A DNA stretch of 64,000 bases, from NCBI GenBank assembly GCA_037447605.1, contig CM074804.1:310001-374000 (forward strand), in the 5' to 3' direction. The translations under genes and the position numbers were made by a program. This DNA comes from Zygnema circumcarinatum SAG 698-1b. Lineage: Eukaryota > Plantae > Zygnematophyceae. Positions within the stretch are counted from its first letter, which is position 1. Every line of letters starts with the position of its first letter. Below are positions 12,485-55,226 of the stretch, piece by piece. Below the pieces are notes generated by a model. That model was given only the letters and a program-made list of their open reading frames with translations, was not told the DNA's origin and did not search any database.

Positions 12485-13637
12485 GGCGGACGAAAGTTCA
12501 GGCAGAGGGAAAGAGTGCGAGAGAGAGACAGTGATGTGGGGGAAGGAGAGAGAGGAGGAGAGGCAGGCACGCGCGTGCGTGCGCGGAGCAGCGGCCAGAG
12601 GGGAGGGGCCGAACGGTTCTGTGTCCTTCCGTACGGCTGCTGGCCAGACCTGGCGCACGCGACTCCATGAGTCCGACTCGCAGTTCCGTTACGATTGCTG
12701 CCAGCCGCCGGCCAATCTGCGACGCGCCGAACTTGTCACGTGGCGCGCGCAGTGCGTGCCACGATTCCGAATGACAACAGGTCCGTACAAGGGACTTTTG
12801 GAGTTTTATATTTCAGAATTAGAACGTTCTAATATCTAAAGGTTTCAGAAAAGTTTTCAATCCTTTTCAGAATGGTTTTTACGACCGTTGAAATTGAACT
12901 GCACGTCGTAAACAGGGGGTATTGGAGTGAGCGCACTCTGACCGTCCGATCGTGCCGCCGAGTGCATCGAACAGCCCCGAAACGCGCCAAATGCCCAATC
13001 GCCACCGACCGCCCGATTGCCTTCGAACCATTTCCAGCCGTCCGATAGCTCTCAATGGTTCCGTCGAAGAACTCCAAGACATATCGTTTCCATGTTCACA
13101 TTTGTTAAGCGGCGCGCGTGACAGGGCGTAAACCGCCCAAGCGTAGCGTAGCGTGACGTGGCGGGACGTGACCCAGCGTGACGTGGATACTGCGCGCCAG
13201 CCCGTGCATGCATGCGATGAGCTCGACCGGCGGAGGCCCTCACTCCGCGACAACGGCTGTTGGCGCCGTCGTCATTTCAACAGCCTTTTTAACGCAAATG
13301 ATGCATGTGATGCATTGTGGAGGACACGTACGGATAAAAGTTCATTTCATTCAACACAAAAAAGAGAACCGAAAAGACATAACCATGAACGCGACTTTGC
13401 CAACTTGCGGACACGGGCGAACTTCCATTAGAACGAGAATTGACATTTACAAGAGAGAGAGCGAGAAAGAGTCGCCTGCATTCACGTCGTTGTAAACGCA
13501 GCGGCTGCAACGCATGCATGCACATGCAACTCGTTGAACGGACCGTTGAACTTGCCGCCTACCAGAGCCACTACTACCACTACTACTGCTGCTGCTACCC
13601 CATTTCCTTCCCTCCCCCCACCTCCCCCTGCTGCCCT

Positions 13638-14606
13638 TCAAGCCGTGGGGGGCGGGTGCTGCTCCTCTTCCTGCTCCACGTGCTCCTGCTCCTGCTCTTG
13701 CTGCTGCTGTTGCTGATGCTGCTGCTGCTGCCTCCCCTGCAGAACCCCCGAGATCCTATTCATGGCTTCTATGATCTTCTCTCCGCTCTGCAAGGAGGCG
13801 TCCATGTACTTCTCCATCTTCTCCCACGAGGCCCTCGCCAGCTCGATCTGCAGCTTCCTGGACTCCTCCGCCTGAAACTTGATGAGGTCCGCGAGGGCCT
13901 CGTCCAGGCCCCCGTCCTCTTGGACCTGCCACTTCCTCTTCCGCATCGGAGTCTGCACGCCGCCGCCGCCCGGGGGGTGCTCGCCGTCCTCCGGAGGGTT
14001 CCACCGCAGCCCGGGGTCGCGCATGCCCAACGGAAGGTTCCGTTCACATAGAAACTGCTCCATGGCCTCGTAGATCCTTTCGCTGAACTGTCCCGGCAGC
14101 TTCTTATCCTTCCTCACAGCGGCATCCATGGTCCAGTAGTCGTTGTGTCCGTTCGGAGTCCTGTAGTCCTTAATCTTCTTGAAATCCCTCATCAAATTCT
14201 CCCACTTCTGCCGGCACTGCTCCCTCGTCTTCACCACTCCCTGCGAAATCAAAAAGTCCGCCACCGACTGCCACTTGTCACTCGCCGTGACGCTCCTCCC
14301 TCTGTACCCCTGCTCTCTGTACTTCTCATCCTCCACCCGCCTCGCCTCCACGAGCAGGAGGCCCTGATGCTCCGTCCACCTGCTTGTCTGCTGCTCTATC
14401 CACTTCTGAGTCTGCTGGTCGGGGCTCGCCTGCTGGGCCACTACCAACTGTTGCTGCTGCTGGGCGGCTGCAAGCTGCTGCGGGGACATCTGCGACACGG
14501 CGACCAACTGCTGCTGCTGCTGGGCGGCAAGCTGCTGCTGCGCGGCCAACTGGTGGTGCACGATCTGCTGCTGCACCGACAGGGGCTGGGGCCCTCCCGC
14601 AACCAT
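13638..14606 (-). CDS. Trihelix (Myb/SANT-like) transcription factor, SH4/ASR3-like, copy 1; intronless, polyQ at both ends, C-terminal coiled coil
   Basis: ORF 13638..14660, likely start MVAGGPQP at 14606. WTEHQGLLLVEARR...KWQSVADFL...QCRQKWENLMRDFKKIKDY...YWTM...RKDKKLPGQFSERIYEAM shows the three-Trp trihelix pattern plus the extended fourth helix typical of the SH4/ASR3 clade. Confidence 0.88.
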   Translation of the reverse strand: MVAGGPQPLSVQQQIVHHQLAAQQQLAAQQQQQLVAVSQMSPQQLAAAQQQQQLVVAQQASPDQQTQKWIEQQTSRWTEHQGLLLVEARRVEDEKYREQGYRGRSVTASDKWQSVADFLISQGVVKTREQCRQKWENLMRDFKKIKDYRTPNGHNDYWTMDAAVRKDKKLPGQFSERIYEAMEQFLCERNLPLGMRDPGLRWNPPEDGEHPPGGGGVQTPMRKRKWQVQEDGGLDEALADLIKFQAEESRKLQIELARASWEKMEKYMDASLQSGEKIIEAMNRISGVLQGRQQQQHQQQQQQEQEQEHVEQEEEQHPPPTA

Positions 14607-14905
14607 CTGCACTCTCGACCAACCAACCAACCAACCAACCAACCAACCAACCGGACTCAAATGGAGTCAACGAGAGTCAAACAGAGCCGACCAGTGTCGA
14701 ACAGAGTCAACCAGAGAGTCAAACAAAGTCAAACGGAGGTAGCACACAGAGTAAACAAGAGAGGAGATGAGTAAAGACGGCGGTGTTCGAGAACTGCAGT
14801 ATTGAAATTCTCTCTCTCTCTCTGTCTGCCTGTCTCCCTTCCTCTTTATCACACATCGTCGCCCCTCCCTCATCCTGTTGAACGACATACCTCACCTTTA
14901 TCTTC

Positions 14906-16797
14906 CTACAGCTCGGAGTGAGGGGAGTCGTCAGAACTCCCCTTTAAATATTCTAACAAAAAGGGCAATTTCTCCAAAAAGAAGACAGCCACCATTGCCA
15001 GGCACCCCATTATGGCGACGATGGCAATCAGCTTTAGCACCACCCCAAGTGAAAAATCATCTTTCCCCCCTCGGGGAATCTTCCCCCCAGGATAAAGATC
15101 TCTTATGTCCTGCAAAGAGAGAGAGAGAGAGAGAGAGGGAGGCAAGCTTTACTCTCCATCCACAGACCGTCCCAGCTACATGCCCCACTGCGATGCCATA
15201 CCAGACGAGGAGAAGGTCCTCTCGTCTCCCTCCTCCCTCNNNNNNNNNNCTCCCTCCTCCCTCCTCCCTCCTCCCTCCTCCCTCCTCCCTCACTCCCGCC
15301 ATCCCTTCTAACATGGAGGCTCACTCTTCAAGCTCTTTTTGAAGAGAGTTTCCACAATGCAGCGAATTCCCGCTCACAACACCCTGAATGCATGCATGCA
15401 TGCATGCATGCACAAAAACGATCACATTGAACACACGTGCATGCAGTCAACGTCACGATGACGCGCAAATCTTTTTGAGAGTAACCTCACCATGGCATTC
15501 TTGATGTGGTCCGGTTCATCCCTCCCCGCCATCCCTCGATCGTACAGAGTCCTTCCTTCCACTCTGCTCACTGCTAGCAAGAAAACGGAACAAAATGTAA
15601 ATGGCGATGAAAGAAACAAGCATAACACAATACATGAAATATCTCGCCCCCCTCAAACTCACAGATTCCTTTCTTCCCACAACCCCCCTTCCCCCCCCAA
15701 AGAGAACAAAAAAAAAAAGAAACAAACAAACTACTCCCATTCCTTTACTCTATCACGACAATAAGAAACAAGATGACACCTTCCGAAACATGCCCCACCT
15801 GGAGTCACAACTGGAGGAGTTCTGTCCACTGGAGGCCCCATATCCCCTGCATCCATAGAGATAAATAAGCCCCATTAGCCCCATCTTTTAATAACTAATC
15901 ACTCTAAGAACGAATCAAAAATGGATTGTTTCCTGTAAGAAAGGGGGCTAACTTCTCAAAGATTAAAAAAATTAACGGCTTTCAAGATTAGTGCCAAAGT
16001 AAAGGCATTACTGATGGCATTACCAACAAAGCAGAAACCGCACAATAGAATGTGATAAATATTAAACAAAATATAAGAAGCAGTTCAGTATCCATATAAA
16101 TTGAAGTACAAAGGACTGAACCCTTTCCCGCTTTTTTTTGTTTAAAAAAACCATGTCCCCACTCCTCCCTCTCCCTCTCCCTCTCATCCCCTCCCTTGGC
16201 CAACCGAGAGAGACGCAAAGAAGTAACCTTTAGAAATGGAGCGCACTTCTCCCTCCTCCTGCTCACTTCCTCTCCACTTCCCTCTCCCACTTCATTTCAC
16301 CACTTCTCCCTCGCTCCTCTCCCTTCCCTCTCTTACTCTCTATTCCCCTCCTTTTCCCCCTCCCCCCCACTCTTATGTTTGCTCACCACCCCCCCCTTCC
16401 TGCCCCCTTCTCCCTCAAGGGAGCTAGGAAGGGGGAGAGAGCGAGTGAGAGTTGAAGCGAGAGAGAGAGAGAGGGGGAGGGGGCGGGTCGTACCGAGCAG
16501 GCGCACCTCGGCGTGCAGGTGCCACTTCTTGGAGCCGGCGCCCTCGGGCAGGTCGGCGAGCTCCTGCGAGGACTCGAGCGGCTGCGCGCCCTCGAGGCCC
16601 TCGCTGAAGGGCGCGGGCGGCAGCGTGAGCGCGATCCACGGCAGCGCGGTCTGGCCCGGCAGCATGTCGCGCACCTCCGCCAGAAACCGCCGCTTCAGGT
16701 CCGACACCGTCGCGTCGCCCTCCTCCAGCGCCACCGCGATCGCGTCCGACGGGCTCTCCCCGCGCAGGAACACCTTCAGCCACACCTCGCGCGCCAT
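14906..16797 (-). CDS. Unknown ~195-aa protein, copy 1: N-terminal ubiquitin-like-fold candidate plus a C-terminal transmembrane helix
   Basis: Exons 16797-16494 (304 nt), 15570-15491 (80 nt) and 15109-14906 (204 nt) join in phase with GT-AG sites. Exon 1 has very high GC3 coding bias. TM segment LGVVLKLIAIVAIMGCLAMVAVFFL. The same exon structure is kept in copy 2. Confidence 0.7.
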
Positions 16798-18272
16798 CTG
16801 CCTGCTCTCAGCCTCAGCCTCAGCCTCAGCCTGGGCTTTCGAGGTGTGAGGGAGGGAGGGAGGGTGGGGAGAGGGAACGGGGAGGAGAGAAGGCGGGAGG
16901 GGAATGTGAGAGACTGGGGGAAAGGAGAGAGAGGAGTGGGAGACAGAGGGGGAGCTAGGGAAAGAGGGAAAGGAGCCGGGCGCGAGAGCGAGGTGGAGGG
17001 TGTGAGAAAGCGAAAGTGTGGGTGGGACGGAGGGAGGGAGATGACGGGGCGGGCAGGAGGGGGAGTGAGAGCGTAGCGTAGCGCGAGAGGGCGAGCGGCG
17101 AGCAGGGAGAGGCGCGGGGGGAGGGCGAGAGAGCGCGCAACGGAACGGTCTCCGCCGCGACGGAGGCCACGCCTTTGGGGATAGCGGAGCGGGCAGCGGA
17201 AACGTTTCACGGGCAGCAGGCCGAGACCGGGCAGATCAAAACGTTCCGACTCGGTCTAACTGCCAGGGCCTGGCGCTTCCATGTGGGCACGAAACCTTTC
17301 CAGTCTGCCCGAATTCGATTGGCTTCACGAAATATCTTTTGGTTTTGTCTTACCGTAAGATTGAACATATCGACGGCGTAGAATCCATCAAACTTCAAAA
17401 AGTTTGTTGTCTCTTTTAAGGGAGGCTTGAGAATTTTCACAAGAAAAAATAGAAACATAACCAGAAAACGATGGCTGCCCGAAACCATGTTTGTTTTCCT
17501 GCCCGTGGCCCGCCCATTCGCGGGCCGCCGTCCCGTGGCGGCGAACCGCGAGGTGTGCGCATTCGGCGGGCCGTCCGAACGAACGGCCGCCATGGAGCGC
17601 GCGCCCTCCGCCGTCCGATTGCTATCGGACGGTCGAGAGAGGCCCGAGAGGAGTCGATCCATCTCGCCGTGCAACGCTGGCCGCAGCCCCGCCCCTTCGC
17701 ATGCTGTCAGAGGCGCCGCGCGGCAGTTCGCGTGGCAATTCGCTACAGTTCGCTCCAGTTCACGCGGCAGTTCGCGTGAGTTCGCGAGAACCGCGACTGA
17801 GACCGTTGACCCTGTGAGGACCTGGCCGGTAGGAACACAGCCCTAGAGATAGACCCACACGGATAGACAAGTCGTGATCCACCTAGACGGATCCACCCAT
17901 GGACCCAGGAATCAGTGGGCCCCTTCAAAATATCGCGGCTAGGGCTGAGCTGGCGGCCATTGTGCGGCCCCTCTGGCCGCTTTCTCAACAGGACTTGACA
18001 AGTGAGGGTAGTAGTACACGTGGCATCTCACCATTGGCGGTGTCTGTCTTATCCGTACAGTAGACCGCCTTGGACGAACGGGCCCCACCCGCGGCAGGAT
18101 GACTTGGCAGGTGACAGCCAGTCAGGGAATGCCACGTGGGTAGCGTGCTGACGTGGCCGGCTGTTGGGACCTCGTAGAGCACAGCCCTACTCCCTCTGCG
18201 ACCTTCCACTGCTCTCTCGCTCGCCCTCTCGCTCCCCATCTCCCTCTCTCTCTCTCTCGCCTCTTAGTCGCC

Positions 18273-21200
18273 ATGGCTGGGGTTGCAGCTTTGCAGGTAG
18301 CCTCTAAATTGAGAGTTTCCGCCATGGCCGTCAGCCATGGCGGAAGGGAGGGAGTGGTGCCCTCCTCTCGCAGGGTCCAGCTGGCGTGCGACCTACTCGG
18401 TGCGGAAGTCGCGGGGAGGAGTACACGTGGCTGCAGCACGAGGGCGGTGCGGAGGGCGACGCCTGTGATGGCGATGAAGTCCAAAGCGGTGGCGGTGGAG
18501 GCAGAGAGCGCTGTGGAGGGGCTCAACATCGCGGATGATGTCACGCAGGTTAGAAGCCGGGGGAGGAAGAGAGAGAGCGAGAGGGAGAGGAGAGAGTGAT
18601 GGGGGGAGGAGGGGGGAGGGAAACGGAGAGATAGAGAGAGGGAGTGGGGAGAGGAAGAGAGAGTTGGGGAAGGAGGGGAGAGTGGGAGAGAGTGGGAGAG
18701 TGAAGGGAAGGAGAAGAGAGACTGGGGGGGGTAGGGGCGAGAAAGAGAGGAAGAGAGAGGGGGGGAGGGAGGGGAGAGAGGGCGAGGGACGCGTATGGAT
18801 TTCCTGTCCGGACACGATGAAGGATTTCCGATTGCAAAAAACCACGTTTACTAGTGTCGTTGTTCAACCCCCTCTTTCACTACTCTGAATTTTTTTCACA
18901 CACCCTTTTTTAAATTACTTTTATTTCTCTTCTCTTCTTTGTTTACTTTCTGTTACTCTATTGTGTAGCTCGGGCTTTTAGGATTTTTAGGGTACGGAAT
19001 GGGTTGTGAATTGGAATAATTAGGGTTGAGGTGGGGCTTGGTTGATGTGCAGCTGATCGGCAGGACTCCGATGGTGTACCTGAACAAGGTGGTGGAGGGA
19101 TGCAGCGCCATCATTGCTGCTAAGCTCGAAATTATGGAGCCCTGCTGCAGCGTCAAGGACAGGTTACGGCCTGACATAGGGTTCAGGACCTCGCAATTAG
19201 GGTTCAGGACTTCCGAATTAGGGTTCAAAATTAAGGTTAAGGTGACTGCAGCATCAAAGAGTCAAGGCCAGGGTGTCTGCTCTCAGGGTTAAAGTTTGGG
19301 TCGGGGAGTAGAGTAGCATTAAGATAAGTTGCGTTAAGTTGCGTTCCAAGTTAGTGTTAAGGGCAGTTGTGTGTCGGTGCTTGTTAGTGTGTTTAGGGTG
19401 CAGGGTGGAAGATAAGGTCTGTGTTACTGCTTGTTGTCGTGAGTATTGTAGATTTCGTGTTCAGTTCTAGGGTACATATTTGCAGTGGTGCTTCATGACG
19501 ACTCAATTATTTTTATTTTTCGTGTTCTTGCCTTTCGCTGTGGCAGGATAGCGTACAGTATGATTAATGATGCAGAGGAGAAGGGAGCTATTCAGGCTGG
19601 CAAGGTAAAGCAGTTCTATCGCTGTATTGCTCGTTTTTTTATTATCCGCGCTGCTTCTATCATGTTTATACATTCCTATGCTATATTACGTGTCTTACCG
19701 CTGGAAGATTGCTGTCGAAGTCCTCCAAATAACGTCGAACTCTACTTGAGAGGGTGGAACGATGAAAATATTTTGCAGAGCATTTTGGTGGAACCCACGA
19801 GCGGAAACACCGGAATTGGTCTCGCATTTATCGCTGCTGCAAAGGGGTACAAATTGATCCTCACCATGCCCGCTTCTATGAGTCTGGAGCGACGGATTCT
19901 GCTCCGTGCTTTTGGAGCAGAACTGATTCTCACGGATCCGGCGAAGGGCATGAAGGGAGCGGTCATGAAGGCGGAGGAGATTGTGAAAAAAACGCCAAAC
20001 TCGTACATGTTGCAGCAGTTTGAGAACCCTGCAAACCCTAAGGTGGGGCTAGGTGTTGAAATTTTGGAGAGGGAGGGACCAAGGGGAGGAGGGAAGGCGC
20101 AAGGAGGGAGGGAGGGAATGAGGGAAGAAGGGGAGGGAGGGCGGGAGTGAGCCATACACATTAAAACAGTTTATGAGTTATTGAAGTGAATATGGATCTC
20201 CCTCTCTCTCCCTCTCTCTTACTTTCCCACTCACTCTCTCTCCTTCCTCTCCCTACAGGTCCATGCAGAGACAACTGGACCAGAAATTTGGGAGGATACC
20301 GCTGGACAGGTGGACATTTTGGTGGCGGGAATTGGAACCGGAGGGACCGTGACGGGCGCTGGAGGCTTTCTGAAGAGTGTGAAGCCGGGGTTTAAGGTGA
20401 GAGAGAGAGAGAAGGGGGGGGGGGGGGGGAAGCAGAAACCCAGAAGGTTTACGCTGGTGGATTTTAGGGTTTAGAGTCTCGTTTTTAGGGTTCGGTTTTT
20501 AGGTTTTGTGACGTCTTCAACGAATGGTCAAGAACGAGTCGACCTGGGAGTGCTCAGTCAGTCAGAGTTTGATGTTTGTTCATGTGAGCGCGGCATGCAT
20601 GTAAACCAAACCATGACCTGTTTTTGGTGTTCACGTGGGAGCAAACTCTGATTTGGTAACAGGTCATTGGGGTGGAGCCGGCTGAAAGCAACATCCTGTC
20701 AGGGGGCAAGCCAGGTGTCAACACTGCCTTGAAACTCTATGGGAAAGGAGACCGAAGGGAGGAGAGAGAGGAGGGAAGGAGGGAGAGGGGAAGAGGGAAG
20801 TTGAACAGGAGAACAGGACGCTTGAGGAAAAGGAGGAAGGAGAGGGAAGTGGGGAGGGAGAGGGGATGGGGGAGTAAGGGAACGGTGTGAGGGAGGGGGC
20901 TGACCAATGATGAAAAGCTGCAAATATCCTGATTTAATGACTTCTTTTGGGCTGTTTTTGGCTGAGCAGGACCCCACAAGATTCAGGGAATCGGAGCAGG
21001 ATTTGTGCCCGGAATTCTGGATGTGGGTTTGCTGGACGAGGTTATTCAGGTGAACGCCCTGACTTCTAGTCTCAGTGTGAACGCCTTTGAACGGGATTTC
21101 TGAAGCCCATCTTTAGCAGGGATGTAAAAGCAAAGACCTCCTTCGAAACTCTAAAAACTTTAAGAAAACCTGAAATGCCATTTGGAAAGGCCCCTCTTTT

Positions 21201-21913
21201 TGAAACCCGAAAGTCAGTCTTCCCTTTTACTGTTGAGCAGGTGAGTGGAGACGAAGCGGTAGAGATGGCGAAGCAGCTCGCTCTCAAAGAGGGGCTCCTG
21301 GTGAGTTAGCTTTGACAGTTCAAACCCTAATCAATCACCTGATGTAATGAAGTGCTTCTTTACTTGTTGACTTCATCAAAAGTCTTTCAGTCTTGTCGAG
21401 TTAACTTTAAGAAGATCCCTGCAAGCGTACTCTGCAATTTCCCTTCCCTTTCCTGGCTTTTCGCCTTGTGGCGGTCAGGTTTGTTCTGCAAACCTAAAAT
21501 TGTAGTGTTCCTAACAACCTGAAAGACCAAAACATTCAAAAATTTAATAATCTTAATAGCCATAAACTCAAATCTTTTTGGTTTTCTCAGGTGGGTATCT
21601 CTTCGGGAGCTGCTGTTGTGGCTGCAATTCGGGTCGGTAAGAGACCGGAGAACGCCGGAAAGCTCATATCGGTAACTTTCTGTCCTTCAACCTAACTATT
21701 AATCCCTAAATTCGAAACTTTGAATCCTCCTCCAAAACTGATACCAGAAACCCGAAAGCCTAACCGTAATTTCATACGTCTTAAATCTTTGGACCCCTAA
21801 ATTTTGCTATGCAGGTGATTTTGCCTAGCTTTGGCGAGCGTTATTTGTCTTCCGTTCTGTTCCAGTCGATTCGGGAAGAGGCCGAAAACATGAAGCCGGA
21901 GCCCCTGGAATAA
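18273..21913 (+). CDS. OASB: O-acetylserine(thiol)lyase / cysteine synthase, organellar (probably plastid) isoform
   Basis: Ten exons: 18273-18548, 19053-19162, 19547-19604, 19779-20042, 20259-20396, 20663-20714, 20970-21049, 21241-21300, 21591-21671, 21815-21913. Motifs PCCSVKDR (PLP lysine), [36 protein letters not shown]-terminal transit peptide rich in S/A/R. Confidence 0.95.
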
Positions 21914-22479
21914 GTACTTTCAGTGAATTTTTGTAAGCCGAAGAAATGTATGGAGACTTCTCTGGTCATGCTCACTTACTACGCCAGTCGGGTGGTGCCC
22001 TTAATGCTGAGGAGTGCACCTAGTCTTGAGTGGGGGTTGCACTTAAGATAGGGGGTGTTGGGGCCGGTGGTTCTAACGTTTTGTTTGTATTTGTAGCGAC
22101 TACATGAATGGTCCCAGCGGCACCCCGTTTCCATTTGAAATGATGTGGATTGTCGCTTTGAATATGTGCGTCGTAGATCAGGACATGAGCATGACATATA
22201 CACGCACACACAGGAGGGGGAGGGGGGAGGGGGGGAGGAGGGCGAAGGGAGAGATAATTTTGCGCATGAAACATTTTCACTCGTTCGACTAAACTCTAGA
22301 AATCAAATTCAAAATAACACAACGCAATCTATTCACATTCTGTAACCTTGTAAACGAATGAAACAAGTCTACACGCTGCCCTCCCTAAAGCCTATTAGGA
22401 CTAGGTGGTAGGATCACTTGGGAGGAAGAGAGTGAGAGGAGTGCAAGGAGAGTAGGCCAAAAGAGGGTGTGGGAGGATG

Positions 22480-25359
22480 TCACTTTTTAGACAATGCTTG
22501 GCTCAATATATGCGAGACACTAGAACTTTGTACCAACGGAGACCCTCCCCAGCTCCTTCCTTTACAGAGCCTCGTCGGAGGGCTCATTGCCACCCGACTT
22601 GTCCCCAATGTGCTCTCGAATTCAAACTCGCCCAAGATATTTCTAGAACCGGTCCTTCCCTCTTCAAAGGCAGCGAGTTCTTCGCGCTGCTCGAAAGGCA
22701 CCCCCCTTTCAATTTTCTCCTCCTCAACCCTCAAAACCTGCTCTACTTTTAGTAAATCCCAAGCCCTAAAAGAGGGAATTTGACTAACAGTTTTTTCATC
22801 AGACCTGATCTTTTCGACATCTCGTTCGGGATTCAGAACAATACATGTTAAATCTTTCACTACGGTCGGAAGTGATGATGTATAAATCTCAAGGGAGCCA
22901 TTCTCCCCCGCTCTATCTCCCTCACTGCGAATGAATTGAGAGATAGCCGATCCCTCCCACCTATTCAGAAACCCCTGAGGCCTCTCCCTCGGTTCTAACT
23001 CCCTCTCCCTCTCCGTCTCCCTCTCCCTCTCCCTCTCCCCTCCTGCACCTATAGCAGGAATGAGAGAAGGAGAAGCGAGAGAAGCTCCTCCTCTCTCTCT
23101 CTCAAACATGCCTGGTCCGGGAGAGGAAGGTGGCCAAGCAGGCGTTACATTTTGGGCAGTAAAGTTCTGAAATCTCACATCAGTCGTCAACGGTGACTGT
23201 AACGGAGGATATGGAACGCCTCCAACCATGGGAACTGCAGGTCCTAGTTCCGTGGAAAAATTGAATCCGGGTCCCGAGAATGGATCGTACTCATCCCTCT
23301 CCCGCTCTTTCTCCCTCTCTCTCTCCCACTCCTCTCTCTTCTCTCCCTCTACCACCGTCACCTGCTTATTTATTTCTGTTGGAGGGATTTGTGCAGCCAG
23401 CGCAAACCTCCGCTTCCTCTCCTGCGCCTCCTCCTCCACTTTCGTCTTCAGAGCCTCCATCTCCTCGACGGAAAGCGGAGCATGTGAAAACCGACACAGT
23501 TCTCCGTCCAAGCAGCGCTTAAACACATGGAAAAACTTGCATGGAAACGCAGCAAGATCATGAGAGTATTTACACTCCTGTCCCTTAAGGCAAGTGTTAT
23601 TCAAAAAATGGCTGCAGACCCTCTTCTTTGTTATAGGTATCGCATCATGTGAAAATGTACATTCCGACCCTCTTGTACATTTCCCTTCCATCCAAAAAAA
23701 GCATAGTCTCGGAGCTTCTTTTGCGTTCCGTTCAGCGACTCGCATCCCACATCGAACGTGCCCGCCTTCCGCTCTCAATTTCGCAGCTTTAGCTCGATTT
23801 CTTTTGATTTTCCTTGCTATCTTCTGCTCAGGAGTGAGTATTACTCTCTTACTCCTCGTCCTCTCTCCTTCCTCTCCCTCCTCTCCGTCTCCTGCTTCCC
23901 ACCGCCCGACCTCCTCCTCCACTATCGCTGTCAGACCCCCCTTTTTCTTCCGCTTCTCTTCTTTTCCCTCCACTAGTTTCGGAGCAGCCACGGAATTCCC
24001 ATGTGCTTCCCCATTCAAAGCAGGACCCCCCACCCCTGTCCCTCTCTCTCCCTCCTCTCTTTTCTCCTCTCCCACTCGCTCTCCCTCCACCTTACCCTCC
24101 CTTCTCCATGGCTGCGATGCGGCTGTTCTTACCGTTGGACCTCCTTCCCCCATTTTCACTTCGACCCCACTCTCGCCCTCCTCCTTCACCTTTCCTTTCC
24201 TCTCCCTCTCCTCCTCTCCCTCCTTTCTCTTCTTCCCAACCCCTCCCTTCTTTTCTCTCACCCCTCCCTTTCTAAACTGCGCCTTTTTCGCCGTCTCCTC
24301 CTCCCTGCTCTCCTCACTCTCTCTCGCCCTCTTCTCTCCCCTCAATTTCTCCTTCCTCCCTTTCAATTTCTTCACCCGAAAACTGTCCTCCCCGTTCCCC
24401 CAACTCCCACTCCTTTTCCCCCCCTTAGCACACCGATTCGGAACATTCTTAACCCTTGAACCCTCAACAAAAAAATCACTTTCTCCCTCTCCCTTCCGCT
24501 CTCCCTCTACGAATCCCTGGCACCCCCACCCCATTTCTTGCATCCACAACCCACCATTTCCAACCTCCTCCGGAACCCCATTTCCCTGCCCCCGACCCAT
24601 TTCCTTGATCCCCATTGTAACCACAGCCTCTGAAACGTCCCCTGAACTCTTTCCTGAACCCTCTCCCTCTCCAAATACTGCAGCCATCCAAGCAGCCTGT
24701 GCAGTCTGTACGGACGGACTTTTCGACATAATCCTCTGCACGAAATTTCCGCCATGGATTGGAGAAGAGGAGCCCTTCTCTCCAAAAACCCTAACTTCTC
24801 CCTCCTCGTCAGAAACTCTAATTTCCCCCTCCTCTCCGCCAAACCTGGATGCTCTCGCCTCTCCTGAATCCCTCACTTCCCCCTCCCGCTCCCTTTCTCT
24901 CTCCCCCTCCCCCTCCCTCTCCTCCTCCCTCTCTTTCTCCCTGTCTCTCTCCTTCTCCCTCTCCCTCACTCTCTCCCCCTCTCTTTCCATCTCCCACTCG
25001 CTCACCTCAGAGGCCTTCAGAAGTTCAGGCGTGAGGCCATTGGATAACTTTCGGGTTGTAGCATGACCAAGGCGATGCGCTGCACTGCGAAGCCTCCCCA
25101 TGGCGGCGACGCCCATCCCCCGCAAATGCGGAGGCACACGCCAGGGAGGTTCCAAAACATCTGGCGCCGCCACGAGGCTCTCGCGGGCAGAGGAATCCGC
25201 CATGGCAGGAGAGCTTGAAGCCATGGGCAAGCCCATAACTGAAAAAAACTCTCCTCCTGTGACGCTATGGCGGCATTTTGGGGAGGACAGCGGCCATGGC
25301 GAGGGAACAGTCAGCTGCGGCAACCCTAATCCTTTACATACGCGGAGGGGCGACATCAC
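22480..25359 (-). CDS. CCCH-type zinc-finger protein with three tandem C3H fingers (ZC3H4/6-like, plant C3H65-like)
   Basis: Single 959-aa ORF with CFFWMEGKCTRGSECTFSH, CSHFLNNTCLKGQECKYSH and CKFFHVFKRCLDGELCRFSH after a basic ILTPEQKIARKIKRNRAK segment. The true start (25359 or a downstream Met) and any cryptic introns are uncertain. Confidence 0.85.
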   Translation of the reverse strand: MMSPLRVCKGLGLPQLTVPSPWPLSSPKCRHSVTGGEFFSVMGLPMASSSPAMADSSARESLVAAPDVLEPPWRVPPHLRGMGVAAMGRLRSAAHRLGHATTRKLSNGLTPELLKASEVSEWEMEREGERVREREKERDREKEREEEREGEGEREREREGEVRDSGEARASRFGGEEGEIRVSDEEGEVRVFGEKGSSSPIHGGNFVQRIMSKSPSVQTAQAAWMAAVFGEGEGSGKSSGDVSEAVVTMGIKEMGRGQGNGVPEEVGNGGLWMQEMGWGCQGFVEGERKGEGESDFFVEGSRVKNVPNRCAKGGKRSGSWGNGEDSFRVKKLKGRKEKLRGEKRARESEESREEETAKKAQFRKGGVREKKGGVGKKRKEGEEERERKGKVKEEGESGVEVKMGEGGPTVRTAASQPWRREGKVEGERVGEEKREEGERGTGVGGPALNGEAHGNSVAAPKLVEGKEEKRKKKGGLTAIVEEEVGRWEAGDGEEGEEGERTRSKRVILTPEQKIARKIKRNRAKAAKLRAEGGHVRCGMRVAERNAKEAPRLCFFWMEGKCTRGSECTFSHDAIPITKKRVCSHFLNNTCLKGQECKYSHDLAAFPCKFFHVFKRCLDGELCRFSHAPLSVEEMEALKTKVEEEAQERKRRFALAAQIPPTEINKQVTVVEGEKREEWEREREKERERDEYDPFSGPGFNFSTELGPAVPMVGGVPYPPLQSPLTTDVRFQNFTAQNVTPAWPPSSPGPGMFERERGGASLASPSLIPAIGAGGERERERETERERELEPRERPQGFLNRWEGSAISQFIRSEGDRAGENGSLEIYTSSLPTVVKDLTCIVLNPERDVEKIRSDEKTVSQIPSFRAWDLLKVEQVLRVEEEKIERGVPFEQREELAAFEEGRTGSRNILGEFEFESTLGTSRVAMSPPTRLCKGRSWGGSPLVQSSSVSHILSQALSKK

Positions 25360-26094
25360 TCGGCCGCGGCCCTGGCTACATCATCGTACGGCCGTTGATC
25401 CTCAATCTTGGCAGTCCTGTCCGCACAGTGCGAACGGTGCCCGTCGTCGCGGTTCTCCCTCGCGCCGCGAACTGTCGCGAACTGACACGCGAACTGAAGT
25501 GAACTGAAGCGAACTGCCACGCGAACTGCCGCGCGGCGCCTCTGACAGCATGCGAAGGGGCGGGGCTGCGGCCAGCGTTGCACGGCGAGATGGATCGGCT
25601 TCTCTCGGGCCTCTCTGGACCGTCCGATCGCTATCGCACGGCGGAGGGCGCGCGCTCTGTGGCGGCCGTTCGTTCGGACGGCCCGCCGGATGCGCACACC
25701 TCGCGGTTCGCCACCACGGGACGGCGGCCCGCGCCTGGGCGGGCCATGGGCAGGAAAAAACAACATTGTTTCGGGCAGCCATCGTTGTTTGGTTATGTTT
25801 CTACTTTTTCTTGTGAAAATTCTCAATCGTCTCTTAAAACAGAAAACAAACTTTTTGAAGTTTGATGGATTCTACGCCGTCGATATGTTCAATCGTACGG
25901 CGTACCAAAACCAAAAGATACTGTACTTCGTGAAGCAGACGGGAAAGGTTTTTTGCCCTCATGAGAGCGCCCGGCCCTGGCAGTTAGACCGAGTTGGAAC
26001 GTTTAGAGCTGCCCGGTCCCACCCGGCTGCCCTCGAAACGTTTCCGCTGCCCGGCACGCTGCCTATCCCCAAGGCTGTTCCGTTGCGCGCTCTC

Positions 26095-26315
26095 TTCCTC
26101 CCCGCCTCTCCCTGCTCGTCGCTCTCCCTCTCGCGCTACGCTACGCTCTTTCCCTCTCCCCCTCTCCCTGCTTGCCTCTCGCCCTCTCGCGCTACGCTAC
26201 GCTCTCTCCCTCTCCCCCTCTCCCTGCTCGCCTCTCGCCTGTCGCGCTACGCTACGCTCTCCCTCTCCCCCTCTCCCTGCTCGCCGCTCGCCCTCTCGCG
26301 CTACGCTACGCTCTC
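26095..26315. repeat. ~55-bp minisatellite, 4 units, core cgcgctacgctacgctct
   Basis: The core recurs near 26132, 26188, 26243 and 26297. The left arm has one unit (~17070-17090). Confidence 0.8.
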
Positions 26316-26642
26316 ACTCCCCCTCCTGCCCGCCCCGTCATCTCCCTCCCTCCGTCCTCCCTCCGTCCTCCCTCGCCCCCTCCCTCCCTCCCTCCCACAC
26401 ACACTTTCGCTTTCTCACACCCTCCACCTCGCTCTCGCGCCCGGCTCCTTTCCCTCTTTCCCTAGCTCCCCCTCTGTCTCCCACTCCTCTCTCTCCTTTC
26501 CCCCAGTCTCTCACATTCCCCTCCCGCCTTCTCTCCTCCCCGTTCCCTCTCCCCACCCTCCCTCCCTCCCTCCCTCCCTCCCTCCCTCCCTCACACCTCG
26601 AAAGCCCAGGCTGAGGCTGAGGCTGAGGCTGAGAGCAGGCAG

Positions 26643-28261
26643 ATGGCGCGCGAGGTGTGGCTGAAGGTGTTCCTGCGCGGGGAGAGCCCGTCGGACGCGA
26701 TCGCGGTGGCGCTGGAGGAGGGCGACGCGACGGTGTCGGACCTGAAGCGGCGGTTTCTGGCGGAGGTGCGCGACATGCTGCCGGGCCAGACCGCGCTGCC
26801 GTGGATCGCGCTCACGCTGCCGCCCGCGCCCTTCAGCGAGGGCCTCGAGGGCGCGCAGCCGCTCGAGTCCTCGCAGGAGCTCGCCGACCTGCCCGAGGGC
26901 GCCGGCTCCAAGAAGTGGCACCTGCACGCCGAGGTGCGCCTGCTCGGTACGACCCGCCCCCTCCCCCTCTCTCTCTCTCCCCCTCTCTCGCTTCAACTCT
27001 CTCTCGCTCTTTCTCCCTTTCTAGCTCCCTTGAGGGAGAAGGGGGCAGGGAGGGGGGGGTGGTGAGCAAGCATAAGAGTGGGGGGGAGGGGGAAAAGGAG
27101 GGGAATAGAGAGTAGGAGAGGGAAGGGAGAGGAGCGAGGAAGAAGTGGTGAAATGAGGTGGGAGAGGGAAGTGGAGAGGAAGAGAGCAGGAGGGAGAAGT
27201 GCGCTCCATTTCTAAAGGTTTCTCCTTTGCGTCTCTCTCGGTTGGCCAAGGGAGGGGATGAGAGGGAGAGGGCGAGGGAGGAGTGGGAACATGGTTTTTT
27301 TAAACAAAAAAAAGCGGGAAAGGGTTCAGTCCTTTGTTCTTCCATTTATATGGATACTGAATTGCTTCTTGTATTGTTTAATGTTTATTACATTCTATTG
27401 AGCAGTTTCTGCTTGTTTGTTGCTAATGCCATCAGTAATGCCTTTACTTTGGCACTAATCTTAAAAGCCGTTAATTTTTTTAATCTATGAGAAGTTAGCC
27501 CCCTTTCTTACAGGAAACAATCCATTTTTGATTCATTCTTAGAGTGATTAGCTATTAGAAGATGGGGCTAATGGGGCTTATTTATCTCTATGGATGCAGG
27601 GGATATGGGGCCTCCAGTGGACAGAACTCCTCCAGTTGTGACTCCAGGTGGGTCATGTTTGGGAAGGAGTGGTCTTATTTCTTATTGTCGTGTTAGAGTA
27701 AAGGAATGGAGTAGTTTTTTTGTTTTTTTTTTCTGTTTTTTCACTGCTTTTCTTGAAGGAAGAGGGGTTTTGGGAGGCGAGAGAGCAGTGGAGAAAGGAA
27801 TCTGTGAGTTTGAGGGGGGCGAGGTATTTCATGTATTGTGTTATGCTTGTTTCATCGCCATTTACATTTTGTTCCGTTTTCTTGCTAGCAGTGAGCAGGG
27901 TGGAAGGGAGAACTCTGTACGATCGAGGGATGGCGGGGAGGGATGAACCGGACCACATCAAGAATGCCATGGTGAGGTTACTCTCAAAAAGATTTGCGCG
28001 TCATCGTGACGTTGACTGCATGCACGTGTGTTCAATGTGATCGTTTTTGTGCATGCATGCATACATTCAGGGTGTTGTGAGCGGGAATTCGCTGCATTGT
28101 GGAAACTCTCTTCAAAAAGAGCTTGAAGAGTGAGCCTCCATGTTAGAAGGGATGGCGGGAGTGAGGGAGGAGGGAGACGAGAGGACCTTCTCCTCGTCTG
28201 GTATGGCATCGCAGTGGGGCATGTAGCTGGGACGGTCTGTGGATGGAGAGTAAAGCTTGCT

Positions 28262-28292
<31 letters not shown>

Positions 28293-28502
28293 TTGCAGGA
28301 CATAAGAGATCTCTATCCTGGGGGGAAGATTCCCCGAGGGGGGAAAGATGATTTTTCACTTGGGGTGGTGCTTAAGCTGTGTGCCATCTTCGCCATAATG
28401 GGGTGCCTGGCAATGGTGGCTGTCTTCTTTTTGGAGAAATTGCCCTTTTTGTTAGAATATTTAAAGGGGAGTTCTGACGACTCCCCTCACTCCGAGCTGT
28501 AG
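26643..28502 (+). CDS. Unknown ~195-aa Ubl-fold/TM protein, copy 2
   Basis: Exons 26643-26946, 27892-27971 and 28299-28502. Protein identical to copy 1 except two TM residues (LKLCAIF vs LKLIAIV). Confidence 0.7.
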
Positions 28503-28658
28503 GAAGATAAAGGTGAGGTATGTCGTTCAACAGGATGAGGGAGGGGCGACGATGTGTGATAAAGAGGAAGGGAGAGCGAAAGAGAGAGAGAATTTCAATA
28601 CTGCAGTTCTCGAACACTGCCGTCTTTACTCATTCCCTCTCTTGTTAACTACCTCCGT

Positions 28659-28726
28659 TTGACTTTGTTTGACTCTCTAGTTGACTCTGTTCGACAGTGG
28701 TCGGCTCTGTTTGACTCTCATTGACT
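28659..28726 (+). promoter_or_regulatory. Cluster of five W-box motifs (TTGACT) upstream of trihelix copy 2; mirrored at ~14664-14732 for copy 1
   Basis: TTGACT at about 28659, 28669, 28681, 28711 and 28721; AGTCAA five times in the left arm. Function not shown. Confidence 0.45.
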
Positions 28727-28796
28727 CCATTTGAGTCCGGTTGGTTGGGTTGTTGGTTGGTTGCTTGGTTGGTTGGTTGGTTGGTCGAGAGTGCAG

Positions 28797-29768
28797 ATGG
28801 TTGCGGGAGGGCCCCAGCCCCTGTCGGTGCAGCAGCAGATCGTGCACCACCAGTTGGCCGCGCAGCAGCAGCTTGCCGCCGCCCAGCAGCAGCAGCTGGT
28901 CGCCGTGTCGCAGATGTCCCCGCAGCAGCTTGCAGCCGCCCAGCAGCAGCAACAGTTGGTAGTGGCCCAGCAGCCGAGCCCCGACCAGCAGACTCAGAAG
29001 TGGATAGAGCAGCAGACAAGCAGGTGGACGGAGCATCAGGGCCTCCTGCTCGTGGAGGCGAGGCGGGTGGAGGATGAGAAGTACCGAGAGCAGGGGTACA
29101 GAGGGAGGAGCGTCACGGCGAGTGACAAGTGGCAGTCGGTGGCGGACTTTCTGATTTCGCAGGGAGTGGTGAAGACGAGGGAGCAGTGCCGGCAGAAGTG
29201 GGAGAATCTGATGAGGGATTTCAAGAAGATTAAGGACTACAGGACTCCGAACGGACACAACGACTACTGGACCATGGATGCCGCTGTGAGGAAGGATAAG
29301 AAGCTGCCGGGACAGTTCAGCGAAAGGATCTACGAGGCCATGGAACAGTTTCTATGTGAACGGAACCTTCCGTTGGGCATGCGCGACCCCGGGCTGCGGT
29401 GGAACCCTCCGGAGGACGGCGAGCACCCCCCGGGCGGCGGCGGCGTGCAGACTCCGATGCGGAAGAGGAAGTGGCAGGTCCAAGAGGACGGGGGCCTGGA
29501 CGAGGCCCTCGCGGACCTCATCAAGTTTCAGGCGGAGGAGTCCAGGAAGCTGCAGATCGAGCTGGCGAGGGCCTCGTGGGAGAAGATGGAGAAGTACATG
29601 GACGCCTCCTTGCAGAGCGGAGAGAAGATCATAGAAGCCATGAATAGGATCTCGGGGGTTCTGCAGGGGAGGCAGCAGCAGCAGCAGCATCAGCAACAGC
29701 AGCAGCAAGAGCAGGAGCAGGAGCACGTGGAGCAGGAGGAGGAGCAGCACCCGCCCCCCACGGCTTGA
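28797..29768 (+). CDS. Trihelix (Myb/SANT-like) transcription factor, SH4/ASR3-like, copy 2
   Basis: Intact ORF nearly identical to copy 1. Differences: one extra Ala, A/P at QQ[A/P]SPD, one extra Gln, and a few synonymous changes. Confidence 0.88.
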   Translation: MVAGGPQPLSVQQQIVHHQLAAQQQLAAAQQQQLVAVSQMSPQQLAAAQQQQQLVVAQQPSPDQQTQKWIEQQTSRWTEHQGLLLVEARRVEDEKYREQGYRGRSVTASDKWQSVADFLISQGVVKTREQCRQKWENLMRDFKKIKDYRTPNGHNDYWTMDAAVRKDKKLPGQFSERIYEAMEQFLCERNLPLGMRDPGLRWNPPEDGEHPPGGGGVQTPMRKRKWQVQEDGGLDEALADLIKFQAEESRKLQIELARASWEKMEKYMDASLQSGEKIIEAMNRISGVLQGRQQQQQHQQQQQQEQEQEHVEQEEEQHPPPTA

Positions 29769-30559
29769 AGGGCAGGAGGGGGGGGAAGGGAAGGAAGGGG
29801 GGTAGCAGCAGCAGTAGTAGTGGTAGTAGTGGCTCTGGTAGGCGGCTAGTTCAACAGTCCGTTCAACGGGTTGCATGTGCATGCATGCGTTGCGTTACAT
29901 CGACGTGAATGCAGGCGACTCTTTTTCGCGATCTCTCTTGTAAATGTCAATTCTTCGTTCTAATGGTAGTTCGCCCGTGTCCGCGAGTTAGCAGAGTCGC
30001 ATTCATGGATGTTTCGTGTCGATTTTCTCTTTTTTTGTGTTGAATGAGATAAACTTTTATCTGTACGTGTCAATGCAACAATGCACGATGCACAATGCAT
30101 CACATGCATCATTTGCGTTAAAAAGGCTGTTGAAATGACGACGGCGCCAACAGCCGATGTCGCGGAGGAGGGTCTCCGCCGGTCGATGCTCATCGCATGC
30201 ATGCACGCGCTGGCGTGCGGTAGCCGTCACGTCTCGTTACGTAACGCTGGGTCACGTCCCGTCACGTCACGCTACGCGGACGGCGGGCGGTTTACGCCCT
30301 GTCACGCCCGCCGCTTAACAAATGTGAACATGGAAACGATATGTCTTGGAGTTCTTCGACGGAACCATAGAGAGCTATCGGACGGCCGGAAATGGTTCGA
30401 AGGCGATCGGGCGGTCGGTGGCGATTGGGCATTTGGCGCGTTTCCGGGCTGCGATGCACGATGGCGCGATCGGACGGTCGGAGTGTGCTACCGCCCGCCA
30501 AAGTCGGATGCCTACGCCGCGTGTCACCGCCCTGTGCAGGTCAAGGTCAGTCAAGGCCC

Positions 30560-30760
30560 TTTGTCGTTTTGTGCCCACTGCATCATGCGGTGTGCCACGT
30601 GTCTCTCACTCTCTCCCCCTCGCCAGCGTTCCGTACGTCGTCGTGGACCGCCGCGGCACCTTTTTCGGGGATGGATTGGCGGTCACGAAGTCATGTCACG
30701 CCGACTAAAAATGAAGAAAGGGCCCCAATCTGCAGATTTTACAAAATGTAATCCCAACCT
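30560..30760 (+). pseudogene. Decayed fragment of SMO1 exon 1, inverted relative to the intact gene
   Basis: 30615-30652 matches the reverse complement of 12295-12332 at 35/38 nt. It translates PLASVPYVVVDR..FF vs PLASLPYVLLDR..FF in SMO1. Weaker patches continue to ~30760 (gggcccc..ctgcag). Confidence 0.75.
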
Positions 30761-45874: not shown

Positions 45875-46316
45875 TATTGATTTCAAACGTACATGACCAA
45901 ACTCGGCATTGGGAACCACGAGAAGCGGCTCTAGCCGTTTCCGTTTGATCATGACATCATGACGCTTCGATTCCACTTCGAGTTACAGTAATGACGTCAC
46001 TCACTTCAGAACCGACAAATATTCGCTGACGCTCATCCGAAAGAATCTGGTGATTTGTACGGCTTCAAGGGAGACAAAATTCACCTGATTTCCGGCCATG
46101 TATGATTTTTGCGAGGCTCTGATTGGTAGAGATGCCGAATACGGACAAGGATCGGATCTTTTCTGAATGTTCCCTCTTAAACGGTTATGTTGGGAAAAGG
46201 ACAAGCGGCTCGTGCGGCGTAAATCCGGCAAGTGCGGACACGCCTAGGGAACCAGAAACACGACACCGTAGCCTGCCGCGGCAGCATAGGCTGTACGAAT
46301 TTTGTCGCACACGATA

Positions 46317-51091: not shown

Positions 51092-55226
<4,135 letters not shown>

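What the first reader, a model, noticed from the sequence alone, without database searches (positions are those of the whole stretch)
12930..30489. ~5-kb inverted duplication of a two-gene cassette enclosing a 7.6-kb spacer (cysteine synthase + CCCH gene)
Seen in sequence: 12930-17797 and 25446-30489 are reverse complements. Each holds an intact trihelix gene and an intact Ubl-TM gene pointing outward. The spacer genes point inward, tail to tail. Non-coding parts differ by many substitutions and indels, so this is not a simple contig overlap. Established: long inverted repeats allow intramolecular recombination that flips the spacer, as in plastid small single-copy flip-flop and sex-chromosome palindromes. 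Inference: the spacer may exist in both orientations, swapping which arm promoter faces OASB and which faces the CCCH gene.
Basis: partly seen in the sequence, partly recalled or inferred. Interest (0 to 1): 0.75.

Follow-up and report, generated by a model that had tools for sequence, protein, structure and literature searches.

The report
Gene-converted inverted duplication of two genes
Two diverged copies of a 5-kb, two-gene segment do sit in opposite orientation around a 7.6-kb stretch with two other genes in this streptophyte-alga-like genome; the copies have exchanged sequence, but this is an ordinary kind of inverted duplication and nothing here shows that the middle flips.

Summary
Arms at 12930-~17825 and ~25425-30489 are reverse complements: 4743 aligned columns, 95.2% identity, 33 indel events. 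Both genes point outward. The spacer holds a cysteine-synthase gene (+) and a CCCH zinc-finger gene (-), tail to tail.

The N gap at 15240-15249 lies in a (CTCCCTC)n microsatellite inside an intron. Both of its sides are colinear with the other arm.

Divergence is a mosaic. Three tracts at 0.15-1% (one of 666 columns with a single substitution, covering non-coding DNA) alternate with blocks at 5-15%. Non-coding blocks alone are heterogeneous (p = 8e-19). This points to arm-to-arm gene conversion on an older duplication.

A scar of SMO1 exon 1 beyond the right arm shows the copied segment was at least 5.5 kb. No transposon ends were found.

Spacer inversion by recombination between the arms is possible, and it is a known process. 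It could not be tested here. The proposed promoter swap is geometrically unlikely: 96-100% of usable identity lies where a crossover carries each inner promoter region along with its spacer gene.

The scan noted similar gene-converted inverted pairs elsewhere in this genome.

The parts
12930..17825 (-). Left arm of the inverted duplication (genes on the - strand, pointing outward)
25425..30489 (+). Right arm of the inverted duplication (genes on the + strand, pointing outward)
13638..14606 (-). Trihelix (Myb/SANT-like) gene, left copy, single ORF of 322 aa from the first ATG
   Evidence: Pfam PF13837 at 4e-12. Compared with the right copy: pS 0.031, pN 0.0056
28797..29768 (+). Trihelix gene, right copy, 323 aa. 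It differs from the left copy by 2 residues and one extra Q after the start
14906..16797 (-). Left copy of the gene called Ubl-TM. Exons 16797-16494, 15846-15799, 15570-15491 and 15109-14906, all introns GT-AG, about 211 aa with a C-terminal hydrophobic helix
   Evidence: no Pfam match
26643..28502 (+). Right copy of the Ubl-TM gene. Exons 26643-26946, 27600-27647, 27892-27971 and 28299-28502. It differs from the left copy at 8 nt and 2 aa (I/C and V/F in the hydrophobic helix)
15240..15249 (.). Assembly gap inside a (CTCCCTC)n microsatellite in intron 3 of the left Ubl-TM copy. Its flanks are colinear with the right arm
13631..14506 (.). Low-divergence tract 1 (6 substitutions in 876 columns), in the trihelix coding sequence
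   Evidence: two-state HMM segmentation
14833..15550 (.). Low-divergence tract 2 (7 substitutions in 658 columns). It covers the last exon, intron 3 (2 in 321) and part of exon 3 of Ubl-TM
16447..17112 (.). Low-divergence tract 3 (1 substitution in 666 columns). It covers Ubl-TM exon 1 (GC3 99%) and 315 bp of non-coding DNA upstream of it. Best candidate for a recent gene-conversion tract
17113..17825 (.). Inner edge of the left arm, the most diverged block (103 substitutions in 703 columns, many indels). The right-arm counterpart carries a 56-bp minisatellite expanded to 4.1 copies at 26088-26315
17826..25424 (.). Unique spacer of 7.6 kb
   Evidence: no other copy in the window
18270..22000 (+). 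Cysteine synthase / O-acetylserine (thiol) lyase gene with several exons; ends approximate
   Evidence: Pfam PALP at 4.6e-21 on 19485-20150; ORFs
22480..25359 (-). CCCH zinc-finger gene (open frame of 959 codons). Its 5' end lies only about 66 bp from the inner edge of the right arm
   Evidence: Pfam zf-CCCH_9 at 2e-13 and zf_CCCH_4 at 7e-13
30577..30667 (+). Scar of SMO1 exon 1 (codons about 40-69), outside the right arm and in inverted orientation. It matches 12366-12277 of the intact left-flank gene
   Evidence: blastn: 90% over 42 nt, 76% over 95 nt, E 3e-10 in the flank-to-flank search
12134..12484 (-). Coding part of exon 1 of the intact sterol-methyl-oxidase-like (SMO/fatty-acid hydroxylase) gene flanking the left arm
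   Evidence: ORFs with histidine-box motifs. The family name rests on my reading of those motifs, since Pfam gave no hit on exon 1

Best explanation
This is an old inverted segmental duplication in a nuclear genome. The composition and gene content look like a streptophyte alga. The label itself comes from earlier notes of this scan and was not tested here.

A segment of at least 5.5 kb was copied in reverse orientation 7.6 kb away. It ran from the middle of SMO1 exon 1 through the trihelix gene and the Ubl-TM gene to that gene's upstream region. The cysteine-synthase and CCCH genes lie between the two copies.

The useless SMO1 fragment of the right copy decayed to a scar. Both copies of the two complete genes were kept under purifying selection.

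Since then the two arms have repeatedly copied sequence onto each other (non-allelic gene conversion). This left three tracts at 0.15-1% divergence among blocks at 5-15%.

Shown here: the structure, the intactness of the genes, the mosaic and the scar. Inferred: conversion as the cause of the mosaic, and the age of the duplication.

Whether the spacer has ever inverted is open. If it does invert, the local effect on the four genes should be close to nil.
For: Structure and identity.

One contig spans the inner left arm, the spacer and the right arm (N runs).

Intact genes. For the trihelix gene, pN 0.0056 against pS 0.031. For Ubl-TM, 5 synonymous and 3 non-synonymous nucleotide differences.

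Mosaic in non-coding DNA only: intron 3 has 2/321 and the 223 bp upstream of Ubl-TM have 0/223. Against this, intron 2 has 23/223, the outer flank 54/687 and the inner edge 104/795. Chi-square p = 8e-19. The longest substitution-free non-coding run is 270 columns, against a maximum of 228 in 5000 shuffles.

Synonymous divergence of both genes (about 3%) lies below that of the arm edges (Fisher p = 3e-6).

The HMM tracts are stable over three parameter sets, except that tracts 1 and 2 merge in one of them.

The SMO1 scar lies in the expected order and orientation beyond the right arm.

There are no terminal inverted repeats or target-site duplications at any arm end.

Low-divergence windows tend to be GC-rich (Spearman rho -0.42, p = 0.019), and Ubl-TM exon 1 has GC3 of 99% against 33-65% in exons 2-4. 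This fits GC-biased conversion but does not prove it.
Against: There are only two sequences and no outgroup, so conversion cannot be told from unusually strong constraint tract by tract. Intron 3 and the proximal upstream region could hold conserved elements.

Part of the high divergence at the inner edge is alignment noise in low-complexity and minisatellite DNA. Transitions and transversions are about equal (121:119), and substitutions are clustered.

A 5' to 3' GC gradient is common in plant-lineage genes, so the GC footprint may have nothing to do with the arms.

The join across the gap at 15240-15249 comes from scaffolding, not from read sequence.

The assembly does contain artefactual duplications elsewhere.
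Confidence: 0.75

Rival explanations
1. Active flip-flop. The spacer exists in both orientations, in a population or in somatic cells, through crossing-over between the arms. This changes how the cysteine-synthase and CCCH genes are driven.
For: The inverted arms have identical tracts of 387 and 341 bp. They show signs of recombinational exchange. Recombination within a palindrome is known to invert spacers (PMC8327919).
Against: There is no data on orientation. The arms are about 5% diverged overall, which lowers crossover rates (established knowledge on homology dependence, not tested here). Crossovers at 96-100% of usable positions carry each inner promoter region along with its spacer gene, so no promoter swap results. 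A polymorphic but functionally silent inversion remains possible.
Confidence: 0.12
2. Assembly artefact. The two arms are one locus written twice (uncollapsed haplotype, strain mixture or mis-join).
For: The window has eight 10-N gaps. Two gaps are flanked by 100% identical direct copies of 1381 and 1271 bp, which look like scaffolding artefacts. One gap lies in the left arm.
Against: Those artefacts are direct, identical and abut the gap. Here the copies are inverted, 7.6 kb apart, differ at 230 sites and 33 indels, and have sharp ends in unique DNA. The inner left arm, spacer and right arm are on one gap-free piece. The decayed SMO1 scar needs evolutionary time.
Confidence: 0.05
3. Selection alone. 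The mosaic reflects coding and regulatory constraint on two independently evolving copies, with no exchange between the arms.
For: Two of the three low tracts are centred on coding sequence. Both genes show fewer replacement than silent changes.
Against: Silent sites are also depleted: pS is about 3% against 8-13% at the edges. Exon 1 of Ubl-TM has 0 of 304 sites changed, including about 75 silent sites. An intron holding a length-variable microsatellite has 2/321, and 223-315 bp upstream have 0-1 changes. Meanwhile exon 3 (3/80) and exon 4 (5/206) of the same gene are more diverged than that intron.
Confidence: 0.08
4. Origin sub-hypotheses; these do not compete with the main reading.
(a) The duplication arose together with an inversion of the spacer through staggered breaks. 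In that case CCCH next to Ubl-TM is the ancestral neighbourhood.
(b) A replication template switch or repair synthesis added the right copy without inverting the spacer.
For: (a) Inverted duplications of non-repetitive, gene-bearing sequence at both ends of a segment, without transposons, are the signature described for Drosophila inversions (PMC1885836). The start of CCCH lies about 66 bp from the arm edge, so its promoter must lie in the arm. That is easier to explain if this junction is ancestral.
(b) It gives the same final structure with two new junctions, both at the right arm.
Against: (a) The Drosophila duplications did not exceed about 1.9 kb; this one is at least 5.5 kb.
(b) It would have cut CCCH off from its former upstream DNA.
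Neither can be decided without an outgroup gene order.
Confidence: 0.4

Closest known systems
Gene-bearing palindromes of primate X and Y chromosomes
   Same: Inverted arms carry intact genes around a unique spacer. There is arm-to-arm gene conversion. Recombination between arms can invert the spacer (PMC8327919 and PMC8981503).
   Different: Those arms are longer than 8 kb and more than 99% identical along their length. Here the arms are about 5 kb and 95% identical, with conversion confined to three tracts of 0.7-0.9 kb. No inversion evidence is available here. The genome is of an alga-like organism, not a sex chromosome.
Inverted duplications at inversion breakpoints (staggered-break model, Drosophila melanogaster group)
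   Same: Non-repetitive, gene-containing sequence is duplicated in inverted orientation at the two ends of a segment. One truncated gene copy is decaying. There are no transposon ends (PMC1885836).
   Different: In Drosophila the median duplication was 321 bp and the maximum about 1.9 kb, with mean identity 88%, and the inversion was shown against outgroups. Here the duplication is at least 5.5 kb, the segment is only 7.6 kb, and no outgroup was available.
Plastid inverted-repeat flip-flop
   Same: Two inverted copies flank a single-copy segment that can invert by recombination.
   Different: Plastid arms are kept identical and both isomers are equimolar in a multicopy genome (established knowledge). 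This is a nuclear locus with diverged arms, nuclear-type spliced genes and no evidence of isomers.
Other gene-converted inverted gene pairs noted in this same genome by the scan
   Same: A mosaic of homogenised, GC-rich tracts and diverged tracts between inverted paralogues (notes s1-363527, s1-390404, s1-406448; AI notes).
   Different: Most of those are head-to-head pairs with short spacers. Here two genes per arm point outward around a spacer with two unrelated genes.

Membership tests
Palindrome / inverted segmental duplication with arm-to-arm gene conversion | Two copies in inverted orientation, colinear over their whole length | tested here: met
Palindrome / inverted segmental duplication with arm-to-arm gene conversion | Unique spacer between the arms | tested here: met
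   17826-25424 has no second copy in the window
Palindrome / inverted segmental duplication with arm-to-arm gene conversion | Arm identity of 99% or more along the arms (the criterion used for primate sex-chromosome palindromes) | tested here: not met
   95.2% over aligned columns; only three tracts reach 99% or more
Palindrome / inverted segmental duplication with arm-to-arm gene conversion | Signature of sequence exchange between the arms | tested here: met
   Heterogeneity among non-coding blocks, p = 8e-19, and the run test. With two sequences only, this is a signature and not proof
Palindrome / inverted segmental duplication with arm-to-arm gene conversion | Spacer found in both orientations among individuals or species | not testable with these tools
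The metagenome scan was blank
Inversion-coupled inverted duplication (staggered breaks) | Inverted copies of non-repetitive sequence at both ends of the segment, with no transposon at the junctions | tested here: met
Inversion-coupled inverted duplication (staggered breaks) | The enclosed segment is inverted relative to the ancestral gene order | not testable with these tools
   No eukaryotic outgroup genome is on hand
Transposon-borne gene capture (Pack-MULE, Helitron and the like) | Terminal inverted repeats or other element ends, plus a target-site duplication around the copy | tested here: not met
   No matches of 8 nt or more (TIR) or 6 nt or more (TSD) at the arm ends or at the scar-extended ends
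Trihelix transcription factors | Myb/SANT-like trihelix DNA-binding domain | tested here: met
   PF13837 at 4e-12 and 46.8 bits, above the cut-off of 27, in both copies
Ubiquitin-like (beta-grasp) domain proteins | Recognisable Ubl domain by profile or by fold | tested here: inconclusive
   No Pfam hit even at E 10 and no PDB hit. The Atlas lead is to clusters with the Crinkler N-terminal domain at 0.89-0.90. The single-sequence AlphaFold model has pLDDT 47.6, with strand-strand-helix-...-strand order only
Cysteine synthase (OASTL), PLP-dependent beta family | PALP domain | tested here: met
   PF00291 at 4.6e-21 on one exon-bearing ORF. The plastid 'B' isoform assignment was not tested

The most novel reading that the evidence does not exclude
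The 7.6-kb spacer toggles between two orientations in natural populations or clonal cultures of this alga through crossovers in the 340-390-bp identical tracts. That would make it a small nuclear 'inversion toggling' locus in the plant lineage, and one of many if the other quasi-palindromes noted in this genome behave alike.
Probability: 0.1. Interest if true: 0.5.

Novelty: new member of a known kind. Interest (0 to 1): 0.25.

Why it matters
This is a clean, small example of how a duplicated gene pair is kept alike by copying between inverted copies. The decayed SMO1 scar marks the original extent of the duplication. If the many similar structures noted in this genome are real, inverted segmental duplication with conversion may be a major route of gene-family growth in this lineage. 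Each such locus is also a candidate site of cryptic inversion polymorphism. On its own, this locus does not change what is known.

Tried and rejected

- Exact look-up of both trihelix proteins and the CCCH ORF found none in the collection. My start choices may differ from the called genes.
- A metagenome scan with the trihelix protein found no relative.
- Pfam, even at E 10, gave nothing for Ubl-TM exon 1 or the last exon. PDB sequence search gave only chance-level hits.
- The single-sequence AlphaFold model of exon 1 was too poor (pLDDT 47.6) to search by fold, so no fold search was run.
- Rfam and tRNA scans of 12000-31500 found nothing in the arms. A known embedded RNA therefore does not explain the conserved intron 3.
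- The search for transposon ends and target duplications at the arm ends found none.

- The joined (spliced) Ubl-TM protein was not searched or folded, because it has no reference. Exons were handled one by one by reference.
- The large protein searches were not used. The identity of the Ubl-TM protein does not bear on the verdict, and a 101-aa exon query would not see full-length relatives of about 211 aa in the word search.

**Readings rejected**
- Uncollapsed haplotype, plastid-like flip-flop and transposon capture (reasons under rivals and membership tests).
Full report
**1. The observation**

The inverted repeat is real. The repeat finder lists 53 colinear inverted pairs between 12972-17786 and 25466-30451, the longest 1005 nt at 97%. 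blastn of the window against itself gives three colinear inverted blocks:
- 12930-15239 with 30489-28163 (93.2% counting gaps)
- 15278-17064 with 28176-26355 (93.0%)
- 17068-17786 with 26149-25466 (85.6%)

There is no other long inverted match in the 64 kb. A global alignment has 4743 aligned columns, 230 substitutions (95.2% identity) and 33 indel events covering 412 columns.

The outer boundary is sharp at 12930/30489.

**2. The gap**

The N run at 15240-15249 is embedded in a (CTCCCTC)n microsatellite. The 46 bases before it and the bases after it align without a break to 28177-28222 and to 28176 downward on the right arm. The right arm has a shorter version of the same repeat, so the left arm carries at least 52 more bases of it.

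The scaffold join therefore agrees with the other arm. The true repeat length is unknown. In the gene model below the gap is intronic, so no reading frame crosses it.

The N runs of the window show that 15250-32776 is one uninterrupted piece. It holds the inner 2.5 kb of the left arm, the spacer and the complete right arm. The outer left arm sits on 9507-15239 together with its unique flank.

**3. Genes**

*Trihelix gene.* Each arm has a single open frame with a Myb/SANT-like trihelix domain (PF13837, 4e-12). The coordinates are 13638-14606 (-) and 28797-29768 (+). From the first ATG the two proteins differ by two residues and one extra glutamine; pS is 0.031 and pN 0.0056.

*Ubl-TM gene.* I derived a four-exon model from the sequence and checked it exon by exon in both arms.
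- Left arm: 16797-16494, 15846-15799, 15570-15491, 15109-14906.
- Right arm: 26643-26946, 27600-27647, 27892-27971, 28299-28502.
- All introns are GT-AG, the phases fit and there is no internal stop. The copies differ at eight nucleotides and two residues, both in the C-terminal hydrophobic helix.

I did not search or fold the joined protein, because it has no reference.

'Ubl' remains a label, not a finding:
- no Pfam hit even at E 10
- no PDB hit
- an Atlas lead at 0.89-0.90 to clusters with the Crinkler N-terminal domain
- a poor single-sequence model (pLDDT 47.6)

*Spacer.* It holds a PALP-domain cysteine-synthase gene on + and a CCCH zinc-finger gene on - (959-codon frame, 22480-25359).

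*Flanks.* On the left is a sterol-methyl-oxidase-like gene on -, identified from histidine boxes in the ORFs (my reading). On the right is an ATG11/ATG17-like gene on -.

**4. Mosaic divergence**

Divergence by feature:

| Feature | Substitutions / aligned columns |
|---|---|
| outer flank | 54/687 |
| trihelix CDS | 10/969 |
| intergenic | 11/282 |
| Ubl-TM exon 4 | 5/206 |
| intron 3 | 2/319 |
| exon 3 | 3/80 |
| intron 2 | 23/223 |
| exon 2 | 0/48 |
| intron 1 | 28/642 |
| exon 1 | 0/304 |
| next 223 bp upstream | 0/223 |
| inner edge | 94/756 |

The pattern does not follow coding against non-coding. One intron and a stretch of upstream DNA are less diverged than two exons of the same gene.

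Using non-coding columns only, the blocks are heterogeneous (chi-square 97.6, 6 df, p = 8e-19). The longest substitution-free run is 270 columns, against a maximum of 228 in 5000 shuffles. Silent sites of both genes (about 3%) are less diverged than the arm edges (Fisher p = 3e-6).

A two-state HMM gives three low tracts:
- 13631-14506 (0.7%)
- 14833-15550 (1.1%)
- 16447-17112 (0.15%)

They lie between blocks at 5-15%. With one parameter set the first two tracts merge.

I read this as non-allelic gene conversion between the arms, laid over an older duplication whose neutral divergence is nearer to 8-14%. Three caveats apply. There are only two sequences and no outgroup. Part of the edge divergence is alignment noise in low-complexity DNA (transitions and transversions about equal; clustered differences and a 56-bp minisatellite expanded in the right arm). 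Constraint cannot be ruled out tract by tract.

Low-divergence windows tend to be GC-rich (rho -0.42, p = 0.019). Ubl-TM exon 1 has GC3 of 99% against 33-65% in the other exons. This fits GC-biased conversion. It also fits the usual 5' GC gradient of plant-lineage genes.

**5. Original extent and origin**

Beyond the right arm, 30577-30667 matches 12366-12277 in inverted orientation (90% over 42 nt, 76% over 95 nt). That stretch is codons about 40-69 of exon 1 of the intact left-flank SMO gene.

The copied segment therefore reached at least 12277, making it at least 5.5 kb. The right copy has since lost or replaced the 563 bp that hold the SMO promoter and start, leaving 87 bp.

No terminal inverted repeats or target-site duplications are present at the arm ends or at the scar-extended ends, so transposon capture is not supported.

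Two origins give the same final structure:
- *Inversion coupled to duplication by staggered breaks*, as described for Drosophila (PMC1885836). There the duplications did not exceed about 1.9 kb.
- *A template switch or repair-synthesis copy*, without inversion of the spacer.

The start of the CCCH frame lies only about 66 bp from the arm edge, so the CCCH promoter must lie in the arm. Only an outgroup gene order can decide.

**6. The flip idea**

Recombination between palindrome arms within a chromatid inverts the spacer. This is established for primate sex-chromosome palindromes (PMC8327919). The arms here have identical tracts of 387, 341, 186 and 173 bp and appear to have exchanged sequence. 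An inversion is therefore mechanistically possible, and it may be polymorphic. One assembly cannot show it.

The proposed consequence does not follow. A crossover at position x inverts everything between x and its partner. The arm sequence between x and the spacer therefore moves with the adjacent spacer gene.

I counted possible exchange positions for identity requirements of 30, 50, 100 and 200 bp. Only 3.6%, 2.3%, 0% and 0% of them lie in the diverged inner 0.7 kb, where a crossover could change what faces the spacer genes. Between 0% and 13% lie anywhere inside of the Ubl-TM start codon, and those fall in DNA that is identical in both arms. Crossovers in the gene bodies rebuild near-identical genes. 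A flip would thus be locally silent, not a promoter switch.

**7. Artefact rival**

The assembly does contain artefacts. Two direct, 100% identical duplications abut 10-N gaps: 46112-47492 = 47503-48883 and 54714-55984 = 55995-57265.

The present structure is of another kind. It is inverted, 7.6 kb apart and differs at 230 sites and 33 indels. It has sharp ends in unique DNA and a decayed scar, and it is largely contained in one gap-free piece.

**8. Comparison and novelty**

The locus works like a small, partly homogenised palindrome. It does not meet the 99% arm-identity criterion of the sex-chromosome palindromes. It could not be tested for membership in the inversion-coupled class.

The scan's own notes list many inverted gene pairs with conversion mosaics in this same genome. 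Some have been followed up and judged ordinary. These are unchecked AI notes and I did not re-test them.

I class this as a new member of a known kind, of modest interest.

**9. Tools that gave nothing**

- The exact protein look-up was blank.
- The metagenome scan was blank.
- Rfam and tRNA scans found nothing in the arms.

Noticed in passing
window 46112-48883 and 54714-57265: Two direct tandem duplications, 100% identical (1381 bp and 1271 bp), each split exactly by a 10-N gap (47493-47502 and 55985-55994). They look like scaffolding or gap-closing artefacts, so any gene there is written twice.
   Followed up: partly
window 30577-30667 (matches 12366-12277): Decayed fragment of SMO1 exon 1 just outside the right arm, in inverted orientation. 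It shows the duplication was once at least 5.5 kb. The 563 bp with the SMO1 promoter and start are replaced by 87 bp in the right copy.
   Followed up: yes
window 16494-16797 against 14906-15846: Extreme GC3 contrast within one gene. Ubl-TM exon 1 has GC3 of 99%, while exons 2-4 have 33-65%. The GC-rich exon coincides with the substitution-free tract.
   Followed up: partly
window 26088-26315 against 17068-17137: A 56-bp minisatellite has 4.1 copies in the right arm and about one copy in the left arm, in the region upstream of the Ubl-TM gene.
   Followed up: no
window 20080-20270: A purine-rich (GGGAGG)n run is followed by a pyrimidine-rich (CTCTCC)n run inside the cysteine-synthase gene. It folds into a long hairpin (-83.5 kcal/mol, z -3.0) and gives sub-threshold MIR2118 hits on both strands (38.6 bits against a gathering score of 85). 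It is probably a low-complexity hairpin and not a miRNA gene.
   Followed up: partly
window 14607-14905 and 28503-28796: Only about 300 bp separate the stop of the Ubl-TM gene from the ATG of the trihelix gene, in both arms. This was not tested here.
   Followed up: no
window 25359-25425: The CCCH frame starts about 66 bp from the inner edge of the right arm, so its promoter must lie in duplicated DNA. The homologous left-arm sequence sits about 450 bp upstream of the cysteine-synthase gene.
   Followed up: partly
window 32500-36992: An ATG11/ATG17-like autophagy gene lies on the - strand in the right flank (PF04108, 1e-14 and 7.5e-11). Another 10-N gap (32777-32786) lies in an ORF near its 3' end.
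   Followed up: no
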